From the NCBI GenBank assembly GCA_907165135.1, contig OU015567.1, positions 15,128,001-15,192,000 of the forward strand: a stretch of DNA of 64,000 bases, given 5' to 3'. Below, in pieces: positions 31,988-39,256 of this stretch; within the stretch, counting starts at the first letter, position 1, and every line of letters starts with the position of its first letter. Both the position numbers and the translations under genes were made by a program. Origin of the DNA: Oikopleura dioica (Eukaryota > Animalia > Chordata). Below the pieces are notes generated by a model that ran no database searches, was not told the DNA's origin, and saw only the letters and a program-made list of their open reading frames with translations.

Positions 31988-33760
31988 TATACACAAAGTA
32001 AGTCGGTTTTTATCAAGCCAAAAATTACGAATGACAAAAAGAGACGTTTTATTGAAGAAAAAACATCGTACAAATTGAATACCAGGATAAACATTGTAAT
32101 ATTTTCACCAGAAGCTAATCCGCCTCAAAGGTGCACTCCACGGGATTCAAAATAAACTAATTGTAATCATTGTTCGCCTTATTTGCCCGGTGATTTGTTT
32201 ATTATCTCAACCCTTTTCAGAGGCGTCTTTTTTTTTGGCCGCGTATCAGCGAAAAAAGTGAAAATGTCAACATCATTTTCGCGCTGAGCCTCAAATTATT
32301 CGAAAGTTGCTGTTTGCTGGTGGCCTTGGCCTCTCTCTTCTGGTGGTCCAAGACGTCAGTGGCGTCAAGTAGGGGCTTGATTGGGGCTCGATTCTTGAGA
32401 AAACGTCAGAGAGATAAAAAATACTCTGAGGTTTGAATGGCTATGCTAACTATTCTGATGAGCGAGAGCAAGAATGCTAATGAGGAGGGGCTTCTCAAAG
32501 TAGTTGAATAATGCATTTTATTCTTTCCCTGCCATTTTCTTGCTTGTTTTTTCTTTGAAAGGCTGTAGAAATGTCCTTTTCTTTTGAAAGTCTTGAGCGT
32601 TTCTGATGAAGATTTCAAAATAGGTCGTGTTTTGTAAACAGCTGTTTCAATTCTGCTCTGGGAGTTAAATTTTTATACGTGCTCGTCGGTTGTCACGGGG
32701 AATCTGTGCCAATTTGTGCACTTGCCTAATTAACCCCGTCAAATATTCATCATTTCGTCGCACGGCTGTGGTAGCTTTGAGTGATCTGCTCCGCACCTTT
32801 TGTACATAGAAGGTTTCCTTTACGATTATGTTTTTCTCAAAAGAATATTGAAAAAACTGGAGACTCGAATTTTGAACTTTCACCTAAGCAAAGGCAATCA
32901 AGTGCCAAGTGGCTCCAAACATCGATCGCTTTCTCGCATAACTGCTCATTATATCCTTGGCTGTATCGGCTCAGCCCTTTTCTGGATGGCCTTGTGTCCA
33001 GAGCTAATTGTCACCAATGACACGAGGAGCGAGATTATTGACGAGATTCACCTGCGACCACTTTGCTTTGAAAATTCCATGCCTCTGAAAAATCATTTTA
33101 AAAGAAGAACTTTTACGATTCCGCAAAGAGAAGGCCTATTTATTAGTTGGTTAGGGACGAATAAAGATGTAATATCTGAGAAAGAGGTTGTTCTTGATTT
33201 TCGATTCTTCTTCTTCGCAAGTTTTAACAGCTTTTTGGGCCATCGTAAACGCTTATTTTCGACTGCAAAGAGAGAGAAAGAGAACGCGCATATGATCATC
33301 TTGTGTCATGGTTATCCTTGTTTATGGATAGTCATTTGATGATGCCGTCGACAAGGTGGGCTGGGCGCAAGTTGCGCGTCAGCGGGTGTTCTTCGTCCCA
33401 TTTTCGCCGCGGCGAGTTGTTTAGCGCCTCCGCGCATCGGCTCTTTAGCGCCGCTAGCAACGCGCTCCGAAAGCTCCCTGGCCATTGAGGACTTTCCCCT
33501 TGATTCTGAGCAATTTTTGCCCAGTTGGAATAATAATAATAAAACATAACTGCATTTTTTCAACCAAGAGCTTTAAAAAACTGCGAAAATTCCACCTAAA
33601 GAGAGCACGGATTCATATGATACTAGAGATATGCAGCCGAAAACGTCAGAAACAAGTAAAGGTAAAGATTTAAGATATTCCTGAATAAAATACAGTACAT
33701 AGAGATTACCATGAGTAGCTATATGATATGATATGGAGCCGAGACTTTTCCCGATGATTT

Positions 33761-33783
33761 TTAGGGTTAGGGTTAGAGTTAGG
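33761..33783 (+). repeat. Interstitial telomere-like tract
   Basis: ttaggg ttaggg ttagag ttagg. Confidence 0.6.
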
Positions 33784-36700
33784 ATCGCGTTTTTGTAAGT
33801 GTAGGGATTTTTAGTCCCGTGATTCCAAAGGGGTTAATTTTCTATCTGATACTTTTGAGCACCATCTACTTCAAATTGAAGGATTCCGATGCCGACCGCG
33901 GGTTAATTGTTGAATCGTCGAGATTGTGGCCATTTCGATGATGCCTGGTGGTGCAGGTTTGTTTTGGGCTTGTTGTTGGATCTTATCGCGCATCCCTTTT
34001 TCATTATTTTATTTTCATTTATGCGCTTATCGGTGCGAAAATGGCGATAATTGCGATGATACTAGCTTGTCGTTGAGCTACGTGGTGGAGAATTGGTCCT
34101 TCTGGGGGACCACACCCGAACCGACTAGAAAGTGTCAGCCAAAACATACGCTTTTCTTGAGACTCATTCTGAAGCACTCATTGAAATCTATATTTCTGGC
34201 GAATTCGCCACAGTGCCAAAAAAGACACCATTTTGTTCAGCTACAATCCTGAGAAGGCATTCTCGAGTGTTTCCGCAAATACAAGCCCCCAAGGACCGAC
34301 TCTTGACTGGGGCCACTCCATCAAGAGGAGAACTTGTCAAAACCAACCTGTTAATCGTCGCTGACGGATCTAATTTCGACCCGGATAAGCTGGCTTCATC
34401 TGACAGTGAGTGGCTCATCCGGCTGTTTTTTAATTATTTACGAAGGGTAAAGTTTTGTTATGAAAGAAAAAGGATGAGGACGTGCTGATAATAAGAGCTA
34501 ATTAAAGGATTAACTGGCTATCAAAAGAGCTCTGACAAATAGCAGATTTTTCGAATTAGAAATTAAGGGAAATCCTTATTTGTGAAAGTGATTTTCTCCT
34601 CCTGAAAGCTTGGCTAAGAAATTTCTTGGCTCAAGAATTGAATAATCAAAATTTGATTTTCAGATGAGCTAAAAATGCACTTCGGCGCCAGACAAATTGC
34701 CCAATTTGCGGAGGATTTATTTTTAATGAAGGCAGAATGATAATTTGTTATTTGCGCGAAAATTAATTACTGACAGAAGATAACATATCGGTGACGGCAG
34801 GCCCTCACGTGGGAAGGTTATGCTTATGATCGTTTTAATTATTCATAGCGTCAAGGTGGCCTGGGGATGAGAAAGAATAAAAAAGTTAATTGAACTTGTG
34901 GCGCTTCTTTTTTGTTTTTTTGAGGGATAACCTCCGGAGTATCCTCACGGGGTTTCGGAGCAGTTACAGTCAGCCCAGCTGTCAATGCAGCCTCATTACT
35001 GTATTTTACGCACAACAAATCAATGGCCGCTCCGATGAGCATGGTCACGTGCACGCGTCTCTCACCGAGCGTAACTCGGATTATAAGACCCTTGTCGCGC
35101 TGCAAAATTATTTATACGCCTTTGAGTACTGCAGGTAACCGCGTGTGACAACAAGCAATAGCCGGAGCGTAACTCATCCTGCTGCGGTGTTTACAAACAC
35201 GAAAAAACGCACCCTTCATAAATATACTTCGCGGGCAATAGGGTAATTGCAGCCTCAAGGAGGGATCGCGAGGCGAAATTATGGTTTCCCCCTTTCGATT
35301 GTCACCTCGGACAACCGCCAATTTGCGACATGAAAATTTCGGGCCCTCTCGATTTGGAAGGGACAAATTCGATTCCTCGGGAAAAGGTTGACACTTAGCG
35401 CCAGATAGAATTTTAATGCTGGGCTCTTATTCTTGGCGGGGCATAGTTTGGTGTCACCAATTATTTGTCAAGAATTAATCGACCGCATAGCGCGAAATTA
35501 AGCTTGAAGGAGTCAGAACTACGTGTTCCTTCAGTCGGTTTTTAGGATATATTTGGCGTTGGATTTGCTCGGGTCTAAATTGATTCGCGCTGGCTGATCT
35601 CGGTTGATATTTTCACTTGCGAGGGGAAATTATCACTCGCCGTCATATGGCAGATTAACCCAAATGCGGGCTCAGCCACCGCCCGGTCTAATCCATCGCA
35701 TCCGAGCTCCAACAAAATTCGCGAAATCACGATCCGTCCGGGGCCAAATATTTTCGCGAAATTTGCATAATGCTGAGTTACGCCCAAATAAAATGTCGGC
35801 CACCGCGCTGATCTTATCGCAAAACACTAAAACGTAAATATCACCAAGAAGGGCAAGTCCTTCCTTCACCAGAAAATTCTCAATAAAAAAACACCCTTGA
35901 AAGTTTCAAGTTGAAACGAAAGAAAAAGACCAATTTCATTTTGTGGCTTCAACTTTGATTTTCCTCCAGTGTTCCTAAAATACAGAAAGAAAAACAGCGG
36001 GCTTATGAAAACACCAACTATTCGGCTTTTGTCAACAAGTGGTTAAATTTCGTAGACTTTTGAGTATTTACTAAAATGGGCTGCTTCCGCTTGGGCGGAG
36101 GGCTTTTCGTGTTTGGAAATTCAGTAGGGTTTGGTACTTTGTCATCGGGCAGTTTGTTTGGAGGCAACAAAACCGAGGATACTCCAGGGCCCTTCTTCAG
36201 CCAGCACCACCTCCTCCGAGGCAGCGCTATAAACACTTGTGGTGGACCCGGCCAGCCACAATTTGACGGATTATGGTTGATTTCTCCACCACCTGAATCA
36301 AGCTCGATTCTTATATTTTCGACACTTTCTAAGAGGATGTACAGTTATTATTCATAACTTTAGAATAACAGCTTTTCAATTAGAAATTAGCGAGCCGGAA
36401 ATTATTTTTACGCTGCTCGAAATAAAAAATTCTTGATAATGGGCGATTAAAATGGTGTTTGGCCCGCTGACAGCGCCATTGTGTTTAGGTCCTTTCACAC
36501 GGGTGCTGTATTTTATCATCATATCAAAAATCCGGCCTTGCTTGCTTACTTGTGCCCGGGCACGCGCGAATCCGTTATCGTGCCAGAGTTAGCCTTATCG
36601 CCTTGGAAAATTAACCTGAAGGTGCGGAAGTTGCCTCTCAGGTGTCTGACCATAAAACCTTTATCGCAAATAAACCCATTTTCGCTTGCTCGAATACGTA

Positions 36701-37669
36701 AGGCCTAAAAGCTGTGAAAATGGTAATTTGTAAGGTGATGAGGGTCGATAGGACTTTGAGCCGTAAGCGGCGGATCATCCGGACTGGGTTGCGTAATCTG
36801 AGAGCAGGAGCGATTTGTTCGCTGCAGCTGATCCGAAGAAAGCATTGCCTGAAGAAAGCAATCTTCAAATTCGAATGGTCTGAGTGATTTTGAGCTTGAG
36901 CCAGGGAATCATCTTTTTCCAGGCGTGGAGAATTGGTGGGTGCGAAGAAGAAACCGCGGAAGAGAATTAAAGCCTATTTAGGGTATTCCTTCTTGCGGTG
37001 TAATCCGAGGCAGACGCGTGGTGGAGGTGGTGGGGCGGGATAAAGTGGCCAAATTTGTGCAAAATGCTCGTCGCGGTCAGACCTGGCGGTTCTCGGCTGA
37101 ATTAAGATGCGGCTGCATTTTTTATTAGGCATAGTCGGGAATTTTAGACTCTTCTCTTTCCAGCGCACTGCGCATCTGATGAAATTATGGAATAAATAAA
37201 GATGGATATTCTATTTTTATTCTGTTTGAATAGAAATTATTCGAATGTGTTCCGGTGAATGATCATCGCAAAGATGGGAATCGTGTTTTTGCTCCACTGC
37301 CAGTGGAAGATATAATTTATTCCCACCGCGCTACATTTCCGCAGCTCTATCCTCTCGAAAGAATAATTATTCGAAGAGGACAAAGGTGCGTGGTTTTGGC
37401 CACTTCCCCTCCAAGGTCAAAAACGAGCTGGTATCCGGCTTGAATGAAAATAAGCGTGGAGACACTCGAGGTGACACTTCCGCGGTTGTATTAACGCCCG
37501 TCAACCGGTTAAATTATATAATCACCGGCCCGTGCATTAGCACGTGACAACATACATTTGAATTTACAAGGATTTACCATTTACGCACGCGGGAAAGTCT
37601 CGGAAATCCACGATCTCCAGTCAAATGGAACTTCAATTTCAAAAAAAAAAATATAACTTGTTAATTTAG

Positions 37670-39256
37670 GTTTCTACCACTCGTTCGCGGAGTTGATCGA
37701 GTCCCGCTCGGGGATTGAGGACTTTCTCAACTTCCTGAGCAGCTCGGACTCTTCTTCATCTTCCTCCTCTTCGTCCACAGAGTCTTCAGAAGGCTATCAT
37801 CTGCTAAAACTCTGGCTGACGATCCGTGGCTATCGAGCAGAGTTTTCGAGGAAAGCCTCTCAAGATGTCCCTCCCAAATTCTTGAAATGGAATATCAAGT
37901 GCTGCAACAAGATCGCTCTCAGCTACGCAAAACAAATCAACAATTTCCCCAGTACTTCAAATCAGCTTACTTCGCTAAGAAAGACAACTACCAGCACAAT
38001 CGAGAAAGTCGAAGAAATGCGGGTGAAGGCAAATCTCGTGAAATCAACGATGATCACGCTTATGGCCGAGATTGAGAGTCAATTGAAGCTGAAGCATTTT
38101 CTGTCTTTTGTCAAGGCAAGAAAACCGGCTAACGATCGAGTTCCGGAAATTCTTTCTTTGGTGAGTAAAAATTTTAAGAAATCGAAAAATAAAATTTGTC
38201 CCTAGAATTCGATGTTTCCAACTGATTCCGACACCAATTCGAGCTCCAAGAAACTGACTCCTCGACCAGTAAAAGAAGCAGAAATTGCCACGAAACGCCC
38301 AGATATCTTCGCTGAACGGCTCATCGAAAAACTCAACCGGCTCGTTTCCGTAAGTAAAAACAGTCACTTACAGTTTCTTGGAAAATCATCTGTTGCGTCT
38401 ATTTATGTCGCTTAGAGGGGGTTAGCATCCGTTTGTTAGATCAATCGAGTACATCAAAGTCGCCCCCGCCGTTGGCACCTCGGCTTCTAATGACGCGTTA
38501 ATTGCGGAAAATCTTACTGTTTATATTTACTCGGGAAAGCACCTTTTGAAATTTCAAATCCGAAATTCGTTGTTCTCAATTATAAAATTAAAAATTCAAA
38601 TTTTCAGGAATCGACTGAAGTTGTACCCACCGTCCTCAAGCCAAAAAGCTCGCCCAAGTGGAAACTTCCTGTTTCGAAAGATTCTTACAACACAAAGGTA
38701 AATTCATTATCCCAATTTCTTCCAAGAAACCTATAATTCCTAGGTTGGCGACTGGCTCGAGAGGAATCATACCAGCTCTCCCCAACTAGACATCAATACG
38801 AAACGAGTCTCCATCATCAAACCTGACGCCAAAGCAGCTGTGCTTCCTCCACCACCAAAGCAGCACACTCGACCCACTCGCCATGTTGGTTCTTCCGTTC
38901 TGAGCTCCGATTCCGGTCTTGATTCGCTCAAGGTCGACCATCGTGCATGCGAAAATTCCGACGAGATCAACGCCATCAAAAGGAGATTGATTTCCGACCT
39001 GGAAAGTCAGCAAGAAAAACCCCCAAATCAGCCCCCAAAGCAGACGAAAGTCATCTACCACTACAAAAACGAGACATTTGTAATCCGCATCGAAGAAGCT
39101 ACCCTGGCCCATCTAATGAAGAAATTCCACGATCAGAAAATCGCCAAAGAAAGTAAATTCTTCATCAAGCAAAATGACGGCGCCTGGGCGGAACAATCGT
39201 ATCTTCACCAGAAACTCGCCACAGAAAACGACCTCGTTGAAGCAAGAGTTGTTTGA
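37670..39256 (+). CDS. AXIN: Highly divergent Axin (RGS, GSK3-binding helix, DIX); 5' exon unresolved
   Basis: Exons 37670-38160, 38206-38349, 38608-38697 and 38744-39256 splice in frame through GT-AG introns. RGS: LIESRSGIEDFLNFL..LLKLWLTIRGYR..EIESQLKLKHFLSFVK. GSK3 helix: PDIFAERLIEKLNRL. EINAIKRRL. DIX: TKVIYHY..ATLAHL..SKFFIK..LVEARVV*. Confidence 0.8.

What the first reader, a model, noticed from the sequence alone, without database searches (positions are those of the whole stretch)
37670..39256. Cryptic, extremely divergent Axin ortholog
Seen in sequence: four exons splice in frame to about 410 aa in the diagnostic Axin order. There is an RGS domain (with a poly-Ser insertion), a GSK3-binding helix PDIFAERLIEKLNRL (cf. 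human EPQKFAEELIHRLEAV), VGDWLER (cf. IMQWII), EINAIKRRL (cf. QLEEARRRL) and a C-terminal DIX domain. It is about half the length of vertebrate Axin1 and split over short ORFs, so BLAST could miss it. My recollection, which needs verifying, is that appendicularian Wnt-pathway surveys reported no clear Axin or APC. If so, this changes the view of the beta-catenin destruction complex in this lineage, as PRY-1 did in C. elegans.
Basis: partly seen in the sequence, partly recalled or inferred. Interest (0 to 1): 0.85.

Follow-up and report, generated by a model that had tools for sequence, protein, structure and literature searches.

The report
Divergent Axin gene in Oikopleura dioica
This is a real, expressed and strongly diverged Axin gene (the scaffold protein of the Wnt/beta-catenin pathway) in the tunicate Oikopleura dioica, a species for which a published survey lists Axin as absent.

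Summary
One more small exon, 4 kb upstream (33631-33661), supplies the start codon. The 422-aa product is identical to the unnamed GenBank model CAG5114189.1 (O. dioica Okinawa, chr2). An intron-free mRNA contig from a sister lineage carries all five exons.

Single-sequence searches fail: Pfam gives nothing on the full protein. Deeper tests support the Axin reading:
- **RGS domain.** The predicted fold matches the Axin RGS-homologous domain best (VIA-align Z 12.1). Profile-profile comparison with Axin-like RGS regions gives 92% probability.
- **GSK3-binding helix.** Its best match in the whole PDB is the Axin-1 peptide crystallised with GSK3.
- **DIX domain.** It is confirmed by fold and by relatives that pass Pfam DIX.
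- **Relatives.** All informative relatives outside the lineage carry Axin features (RGS, beta-catenin-binding motif, DIX).
- **Constraint.** dN/dS is 0.11.

No beta-catenin-binding helix and no tankyrase-binding motif were found.

Martí-Solans et al. 2021 list Axin and APC as "Absent" in O. dioica. So this is a new member of a known family that corrects a gene-loss claim, not a new mechanism. Its role in beta-catenin destruction is inferred, not shown.

The parts
33589..33661 (+). Exon 1: about 42 nt of 5' UTR, then the CDS at 33631-33661 (MQPKTSETSK plus the first base of Gly11). Donor G|gtaaag.
   Evidence: Exact match to the N-terminus of P0098. The 5' end of mRNA contig L009 aligns from 33589.
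33662..37669 (+). Intron 1, 4008 nt, unusually long for this genome. It holds conserved non-coding blocks at about 35975-36650, 36950-37100 and 37250-37620.
   Evidence: The blocks are 80-97% identical to lineage L002, and their mismatches show no codon periodicity.
37670..38160 (+). Exon 2: the RGS-homologous domain.
   Evidence: Pfam RGS E 0.023 over profile positions 2-110 of 117. AF2 model pLDDT 79. Top Foldseek hits are Axin RGS entries 7y1p, 1emu and 1dk8. VIA-align Z 12.1, rmsd 2.4 A, 118 residues, to 1emu. hhalign 92%.
37738..37788 (+). Ser-rich insertion in the loop between the early RGS helices and the next long helix.
   Evidence: pLDDT is below 50 at residues 29-37 of the model. 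The insertion is absent from L001 and shorter in L002.
38206..38349 (+). Exon 3: a Ser/Thr-rich stretch followed by the GSK3-interaction helix.
   Evidence: Collinear alignment with the GID region of Axin-like relatives. dN/dS 0.055.
38296..38343 (+). GSK3-interaction helix RPDIFAERLIEKLNRL.
   Evidence: A profile of four sequences of this lineage has the Axin-1 peptide of the GSK3 co-crystals (4nm0_B) as its best hit in the whole PDB, aligned to EPQKFAEELIHRLEA, E 0.28. The same match appears as 8vmg_C.
38350..38607 (+). Intron 3 (258 nt). It holds an element at about 38422-38535 that is 90-100% identical across three lineages. Its function is unknown.
   Evidence: No Rfam family and no tRNA. 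No stable fold. Unspliced poly(A) reads cover it in runs X6 and X7.
38608..38697 (+). Exon 4: a 30-aa linker in the place where canonical Axins carry the beta-catenin-binding helix. No such motif is present here.
38744..39256 (+). Exon 5: the VGDWLER motif, a linker, the SSDSGLDS motif, a helix, the DIX domain and the stop codon TGA (39254-39256).
   Evidence: BLASTP E 9e-11 to the C-terminal 170 aa of the RGS+DIX protein P0025, collinear to the end. Profile search.
38888..38926 (+). Invariant motif GSSVLSSDSGLDS (DSGxxS type).
   Evidence: Invariant across the relatives in alignments A1 and A3, and present in the canonical relatives P0012, P0014, P0017, P0021 and P0025.
38963..39007 (+). Helix EINAIKRRLISDLES just before the DIX domain.
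   Evidence: Predicted helix at residues 7-23 of the model. It aligns with LNGLKxRLIxE of the relatives.
39044..39253 (+). DIX domain.
   Evidence: The AF2 model has pLDDT above 90 in the core. Foldseek hits: Dvl2 DIX E 7.7e-5, then Dvl1, Ccd1 and Axin DIX (1wsp, TM 0.69). Relatives pass Pfam DIX. The family profile hits DVL DIX at 7.5e-5.

Best explanation
The locus is the single Axin ortholog of Oikopleura dioica. It is a five-exon gene (33631-39256, + strand) encoding a 422-aa protein with the Axin order of parts: an N-terminal RGS-homologous domain, a GSK3-interaction helix, and a C-terminal DIX domain preceded by a helix.

Most likely it acts as Axin does elsewhere (inferred, not shown). 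The helix would dock GSK3. The DIX domain would polymerise head to tail and pair with the DIX domain of Dishevelled. The assembly would then promote phosphorylation and destruction of beta-catenin.

The protein is a reduced Axin. The beta-catenin-binding helix and the N-terminal tankyrase-binding motif, both present in its nearest Pfam-positive relatives, are not recognisable. The partner of its RGS domain is open, because APC is reported absent from this species.
For: **Gene model (shown)**
- Identical to CAG5114189.1.
- The spliced mRNA contig L009 covers all exons.
- A partly spliced mRNA of a more distant relative (L005 against the genomic contig L006) links the RGS exon to the DIX exon.
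- Sister-lineage poly(A) reads match exons 2 and 5.
- dN/dS is 0.11 overall, 0.055 for the GID exon and 0.066 for DIX.

**RGS (shown at fold and profile level)**.

**GID**: the best PDB hit is the Axin-1 peptide bound to GSK3, with P, F, A, L, I and L conserved.

**DIX**.

**Family placement**
- A profile of exon 5 searched against 1.84 billion representatives found 18 proteins. The informative ones share KVGxWL, DSGLSS, LNGLKxRLI and DIX.
- P0025, found with P0012 as query, has Pfam RGS at 5e-11 and DIX at 4e-9. It starts with RPPVIGQE, and its best PDB match is the Axin RGS domain.
- P0014, P0017 and P0021 give sub-threshold hits to the Axin beta-catenin-binding motif (E 5e-4 to 5e-3, below Pfam's cutoff).
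- The ESM Atlas feature search with the full protein returns only RGS+DIX (axin) clusters in its top ten. The top three score 0.88-0.89 with 175-182 shared features.
Against: - No direct, significant single-sequence match to any Axin, RGS or DIX model. Pfam gives nothing on the full protein at E<=1.
- The link to Axin is partly transitive, through unnamed metagenome and metatranscriptome proteins of unknown species.
- The GID match alone is not significant (E 0.28).
- The beta-catenin-binding motif scores at most about 3 bits in the proteins and in all + strand frames of the gene.
- There is no tankyrase-binding motif in MQPKTSETSKG.
- The DIX domain is closer in sequence to Dvl DIX (25% identity) than to vertebrate Axin DIX (12-14%). 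The canonical relative P0025 shows the same pattern.
- No RNA reads from this very strain were available to show the junctions in the window itself.
- No binding or functional data exist.
Confidence: 0.85

Rival explanations
1. It descends from Axin but no longer works in beta-catenin destruction. Having lost the beta-catenin-binding helix and the tankyrase motif, and with APC absent, it now serves another role, for example as a GSK3/Dvl scaffold in non-canonical Wnt signalling or in another GSK3 pathway.
For: - The beta-catenin-binding motif was not detected in the window, L002, L001 or P0070, although it is present in the more distant relatives.
- APC is listed as absent.
- The RGS domain is the least constrained part (dN/dS 0.155) and carries a Ser-rich insertion.
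Against: - The motif is a single short helix and could have diverged beyond recognition.
- Atlas clusters of named axins carry Pfam Axin_b-cat_bind in only 35-85% of members, and the nematode RGS+DIX cluster does not list it.
- The GID and DIX parts are under strong constraint.
- From general knowledge, nematode PRY-1 still regulates beta-catenin despite similar divergence.
Confidence: 0.12
2. It is a Dixdc1/Ccd1-like or Dishevelled-like DIX protein rather than an Axin.
For: - The DIX sequence and model match Dvl and Ccd1 DIX better than vertebrate Axin DIX.
- Like Dixdc1, it has its DIX domain at the C-terminus, preceded by a helix.
Against: - The N-terminal domain has an RGS fold, not a calponin-homology domain, and there is no PDZ or DEP domain.
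- The GID helix and the shared linear motifs tie it to RGS+DIX proteins that carry the Axin beta-catenin-binding motif.
- Dvl is already assigned to another O. dioica gene in PMC8220140.
Confidence: 0.02
3. The RGS exons and the DIX exons belong to two neighbouring genes, and the joined reading frame is an artefact.
For: No spliced reads from this exact strain were obtained. The reads laid were from a diverged lineage and showed no intron joints.
Against: - The intron-free mRNA contig L009 (1389 nt, 420-aa ORF) spans all exons.
- L005 does the same in another species, from the 3' part of the RGS exon onwards.
- Independent public gene models in two assemblies agree.
- The exon order is collinear in L001, L002 and L006.
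Confidence: 0.01

Closest known systems
Axin / Axin1 / Axin2 (conductin) of vertebrates and arthropod Axin
   Same: - Order of parts: RGS-homologous domain, GSK3-interaction helix, C-terminal DIX.
- The RGS model superposes on 1emu/1dk8 (Z about 12).
- The helix matches EPQKFAEELIHRLEA at P, F, A, L, I and L.
- A helix precedes the DIX domain.
   Different: - About half the length (422 aa).
- No recognisable beta-catenin-binding helix (PF08833).
- No RPPVxGxE tankyrase-binding motif.
- A Ser-rich insertion in the RGS domain.
- The DIX sequence is nearer to Dvl than to vertebrate Axin.
- No significant direct sequence match.
Unnamed RGS+DIX proteins from marine metagenomes and metatranscriptomes (P0025, P0012; fragments P0014, P0017, P0021)
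   Same: - The KVGxWL, S(S/I/V)DSGLSS and LNGLKxRLI motifs and the DIX domain, in the same order.
- BLASTP E 9e-11 over exon 5.
- hhalign 92% for the RGS region.
- The GID region aligns.
   Different: - They keep the beta-catenin-binding motif (ILSEHxxRV).
- The full-length ones keep the N-terminal RPPVIG(S/Q)E motif and a longer Ser-rich SQSSDxxSDxLSFT stretch.
- P0025 passes Pfam RGS and DIX outright (P0012 is sub-threshold for both).
- Their species are unknown.
Nematode PRY-1 / AXL-1 (Axin-like, from general knowledge; the Atlas cluster 'RGS domain-containing protein', mostly Nematoda, is the top feature hit)
   Same: A short, fast-evolving RGS+DIX protein that standard searches missed at first and that has no recognisable beta-catenin-binding motif. 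It is the nearest cluster by language-model features (0.89, 182 shared).
   Different: It arose by independent divergence in another phylum. No sequence alignment to PRY-1 itself was made here.
Dixdc1/Ccd1 and Dishevelled
   Same: DIX fold, with the aromatic and lysine positions aligned to Dvl2 Y27 and K68 kept as F and K (alignment; the role of those residues is from memory).
   Different: No CH domain, and no PDZ or DEP domain. The N-terminal domain is RGS.

Membership tests
Axin | N-terminal RGS-homologous domain | tested here: met
   - AF2 model pLDDT 79.
- The top three Foldseek hits are Axin RGS entries.
- VIA-align Z 11.7-12.1 to Axin; the top 29 rows are all RGS domains.
- hhalign 92%, E 5e-7, to the RGS regions of RGS+DIX proteins.
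- Pfam on the single sequence stays sub-threshold, E 0.023.
Axin | C-terminal DIX domain | tested here: met
   - The relative P0004 (41% identical, E 7e-24) passes Pfam DIX with 33.5 bits.
- 11 of 14 aligned relatives pass.
- The model's top hits are DIX domains at E 7.7e-5.
- No direct Pfam hit for the window protein itself.
Axin | GSK3-interaction helix between RGS and DIX | tested here: met
   The motif P-x-x-F-A-x-x-L-I-x-x-L is present. The best PDB hit of the lineage profile is the Axin-1 GID peptide (4nm0_B), but at E 0.28, which is not significant alone. The region is collinear with the GID of the canonical relatives. Binding was not tested.
Axin | Beta-catenin-binding helix (Pfam PF08833) | tested here: not met
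   No Pfam hit. A motif HMM built from five relatives scores at most about 3 bits in the proteins and in all + strand frames of the gene. This is not a universal family feature: named axin clusters in the Atlas carry it in 35-85% of members, and the nematode RGS+DIX cluster does not list it.
Axin | N-terminal tankyrase-binding motif (RxxPxG) | tested here: not met
   The N-terminus is MQPKTSETSKG, with no such motif upstream. P0012 and P0025 have RPPVIG(S/Q)E. This is an accessory feature, not a defining one.
Axin | All parts on one transcript, in the order RGS, GID, DIX | tested here: met
   mRNA contig L009, L005, and the public models P0098 and P0077.
Axin | Nearest relatives outside the lineage are Axins (orthology) | tested here: inconclusive
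   The profile search returns only relatives with Axin features, and Atlas features point to axin clusters.
Axin | Promotes beta-catenin phosphorylation and degradation; binds GSK3, Dvl and APC | not testable with these tools
   Needs binding assays or knockdown.
Dixdc1/Ccd1 | N-terminal calponin-homology domain | tested here: not met
   The N-terminal domain has an RGS fold. No CH hit in Pfam.
Dishevelled | N-terminal DIX followed by PDZ and DEP domains | tested here: not met
   The DIX domain is C-terminal, and there are no PDZ or DEP hits.

The most novel reading that the evidence does not exclude
O. dioica runs beta-catenin control with a minimal Axin (RGS, GSK3 helix, DIX) that has truly lost direct beta-catenin binding and tankyrase control, in a genome without APC. 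Substrate recruitment would then be rewired. One possible route is the invariant SSDSGL(D/S)S motif, which has the form of a beta-TrCP phosphodegron. Another is a new partner of the RGS domain. This would be a natural experiment showing which parts of the destruction complex a chordate can do without.
Probability: 0.2. Interest if true: 0.7.

Novelty: new member of a known kind. Interest (0 to 1): 0.5.

Why it matters
O. dioica is a main model for studying how development copes with massive gene loss. The published Wnt survey lists Axin and APC as absent (PMC8220140), which implies a beta-catenin pathway without its scaffold. Finding a constrained, expressed Axin ortholog removes half of that puzzle and sharpens the other half: whether APC is really gone, and what the RGS domain now binds.

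It gives the field a concrete target for the knockdown methods already used in this species on beta-catenin. It also shows that KEGG- or BLAST-based absence calls in this fast-evolving lineage need profile and structure checks. Finally, the reduced architecture offers a chordate parallel to nematode PRY-1.

Tried and rejected
- **Single-sequence searches found nothing significant.** Pfam on the exons and on the full protein and phmmer against PDB gave no significant match. The RGS profile of the lineage alone against PDB also found no RGS domain.
- **RNA reads.** The only raw RNA runs offered come from a diverged lineage (88-95% identity). Reads lay only partly on exons 2 and 5 and showed no true intron joints. 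The one 'joint' (37913 to 38029, CG..AG) falls inside the RGS exon, where the lineages have equal length, so I read it as a poorly matching stretch and not a splice.
- **Hunt for the start codon near exon 2.** I scanned ATG-plus-donor combinations and tankyrase-like motifs in 33000-37700 and considered tiny non-canonical introns and trans-splicing. All were dropped once the public model and the cDNA placed exon 1 at 33631.
- **Conserved donor-like site at 37385/6.** Rejected as coding, because an in-frame TAA lies 7 codons upstream (read directly from the sequences).
- **Conserved element in intron 3.** No Rfam family, no tRNA and no stable fold. It is also not a hidden beta-catenin-binding exon.
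- **Dixdc1/Dvl and two-gene readings.** Rejected; see the rival explanations.

Full report
**Observation**

On the + strand, 37670-38160, 38206-38349, 38608-38697 and 38744-39256 are joined by GT..AG introns of 45, 258 and 46 nt. They read through in one frame to 411 aa, ending at TGA 39254-39256. The frame is closed just upstream (TAA at 37654) without an ATG, so an upstream exon was needed.

Cluster look-ups of the fragments found by homology search brought up full-length public proteins. P0098 is GenBank CAG5114189.1, 'Oidioi.mRNA.OKI2018_I69.chr2.g8253.t1.cds', 422 aa. Its residues 12-422 are identical to my model. Its first eleven residues, MQPKTSETSKG, are encoded at 33631-33661, with donor G|gtaaag. 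The gene therefore has five exons and a 4008-nt first intron. The window is O. dioica (Okinawa assembly or a near-identical genome).

The Bergen ortholog is CBY20712.1, which is UniProt E4WSH9_OIKDI, named only 'RGS domain-containing protein'.

**Is the gene model real?**

- Against a sister lineage (contig L002), exons are 63-75% identical and the two short introns 38-41%.
- Mismatches pile up on one codon position inside exons and nowhere else.
- dN/dS against the cDNA of another lineage is 0.11 (dS 1.2), with 0.155 for RGS, 0.055 for the GID exon and 0.066 for DIX.
- A Logan contig from run SRR17272677 (L009, 1389 nt, starting with an Illumina adapter) carries an uninterrupted 420-aa ORF. 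It aligns to exon 1 (33589-33662), exon 2, exon 3 and exon 5 of the window. Against genomic contigs of its own lineage (L003, L004) it lacks the introns within their span.
- In a more distant relative, the transcript contig L005 has at least three introns removed relative to genomic contig L006. It runs from the 3' part of the RGS exon to the DIX stop codon.
- The raw RNA runs I could lay (X5-X7) belong to the L002-like lineage. Their loose ends match L002 exactly. This shows expression of the ortholog but gives no junctions on the window itself.

**What is it?**

Direct searches are almost blank. Pfam gives RGS at E 0.023 for exon 2, nothing for the DIX exon and nothing for the full protein. 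phmmer against PDB gives nothing. This explains why KAAS missed it.

*RGS.* An AlphaFold2 model of exon 2 built on a seven-sequence alignment has pLDDT 78.7 and pTM 0.74, and is all-helical.
- Its three best Foldseek hits in PDB are the Axin RGS-homologous domain (7y1p, 1emu, 1dk8), followed by RGS16, RGS4 and others.
- VIA-align gives Z 12.1 (rmsd 2.4 A, 118 residues, 19% identity) to 1emu. The top 29 rows are all RGS domains.
- A three-sequence profile of this lineage aligns to the RGS region of P0025/P0012 with 92% probability, E 5e-7, over 124 columns.
- The less derived relative L001 matches the Pfam-defined RGS domain of P0025 by BLASTP at 4e-6, and matches the window exon at 2.6e-12.

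*DIX.*
- The relative P0004 (41% identical over all of exon 5, E 7e-24) passes Pfam DIX at 33.5 bits.
- 11 of 14 aligned relatives pass.
- The lineage profile's only PDB hits are Dvl DIX domains. With the wider alignment they reach 7.5e-5.
- The AF2 model (pLDDT 81, core above 90) hits Dvl2, Dvl1, Ccd1 and Axin DIX structures. The best is E 7.7e-5, and 1wsp has TM 0.69 with rmsd 2.5 A.

*GSK3 helix.*
- RPDIFAERLIEKLNRL aligns with (D/E)xELA(T/N)KxPxKFAxxLIxKL in all relatives.
- The four-sequence lineage profile has the Axin-1 peptide of the GSK3 co-crystals as its best hit among 177,635 PDB sequences (4nm0_B, EPQKFAEELIHRLEA). The E-value of 0.28 is not significant alone.

*Family.* The exon-5 profile searched against 1.84 billion representatives found only 18 proteins.
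- Besides short fragments of the same lineage, they include P0012 (571 aa) and the fragments P0014, P0017 and P0021.
- A further search with P0012 as query found P0025 (591 aa).
- All share KVGxWL, DSGLSS, LNGLKxRLI and DIX with the window protein.
- P0025 has Pfam RGS at 5e-11 and DIX at 4e-9. It begins with RPPVIGQE (a tankyrase-binding-type motif, from my knowledge of Axin). Its best PDB match is the Axin RGS domain, E 2e-4, ahead of RGS2.
- P0014, P0017 and P0021 give sub-threshold hits to Pfam Axin_b-cat_bind. The joint profile hits the Axin chain of the beta-catenin complex 1qz7 at 7.8e-5.
- The ESM Atlas feature search with the full window protein lists only RGS+DIX clusters among its ten best hits. 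The top three are a nematode RGS+DIX cluster and two arthropod axin clusters (0.88-0.89, 175-182 shared features).

**What is missing**

In the canonical relatives the helix ILSEHxxRVMKTP follows the GID within 5 to 40 residues. In the window, L002, L001 and P0070 it is absent. A motif HMM finds nothing above about 3 bits in the proteins or in any + strand frame of the gene regions.

The N-terminus (MQPKTSETSKG) has no tankyrase-binding motif.

The protein is thus a reduced Axin. Whether beta-catenin still binds is open.

**Mechanism**

- *Shown:* fold-level RGS and DIX domains, the GID motif, one transcript, and purifying selection.
- *Inferred from established Axin biology:* the helix docks GSK3; the DIX domain polymerises and pairs with Dvl (the positions aligned to Dvl2 Y27 and K68 are F and K); the complex promotes beta-catenin destruction.
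- *Unknown:* the RGS partner, since APC is listed as absent, and how beta-catenin is recruited.

**Literature**

Only two papers in the library hold both 'Oikopleura' and 'Axin' in a relevant sense.
[quoted passage not shown] Its supplementary table lists 'Axin | Absent' and 'APC | Absent'.
- PMC5882950 says that orthologs of Axin and others were identified 'in all Tunicata genomes'. The supplements held in the library list an Axin gene id only for Botrylloides and none for O. dioica.
- No paper cites the accession numbers.

**Verdict**

This is a new member of a known family. Its value is that it corrects a published gene-loss call in an evo-devo model and opens direct tests.

Noticed in passing
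window 38422-38535 (inside the intron at 38350-38607): An element of about 110 nt is 90-100% identical in three O. dioica lineages, although synonymous sites of the flanking exons are saturated. It has no Rfam family, no tRNA and no stable fold on either strand. Unspliced poly(A) reads cover it in runs X6 and X7 but not in X5. It may mark regulated intron retention or a control element.
   Followed up: partly
window 35975-36650, 36950-37100 and 37250-37620 (inside intron 1, 33662-37669): Long blocks are 80-97% identical to lineage L002, and their mismatches show no codon periodicity, so they are conserved non-coding elements inside an unusually long (4 kb) intron. One block holds a TATA-like AAATTATATAATCACC near 37510-37525, and a conserved AAAG|GTGCGT donor-like site lies at 37385/6. 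A metatranscriptome contig (X1, 37156-37349) and minus-oriented reads in X6 overlap the region.
   Followed up: partly
window 38888-38926: The motif SSDSGL(D/S)S is invariant in all relatives, including the canonical Axin-like proteins P0012 and P0025. It has the form of a DSGxxS beta-TrCP phosphodegron (resemblance recalled from memory to IkBa DSGLDS and beta-catenin DSGIHS). I do not recall it in human Axin1. Untested.
   Followed up: no
L001:5127-5310 and P0012/P0025 (about residues 225-250): The less derived relatives keep a Ser/Thr-rich stretch (SFSDTTETYSLTMDLSD in L001; SQSSDCTSDTLSFTTE in P0012) between RGS and GID. It resembles a human Axin1 stretch that I recall as SLSSDADTLSLTDSS. 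In the window only a remnant remains (FPTDSDTNSSS, 38215-38247).
   Followed up: no
window 35017-35052: A 35-nt stretch collects about 30 reads per run in X5 and X6 (about 12 in X7), with long unmatched ends on both sides. This is probably a short shared segment of an abundant transcript encoded elsewhere.
   Followed up: no
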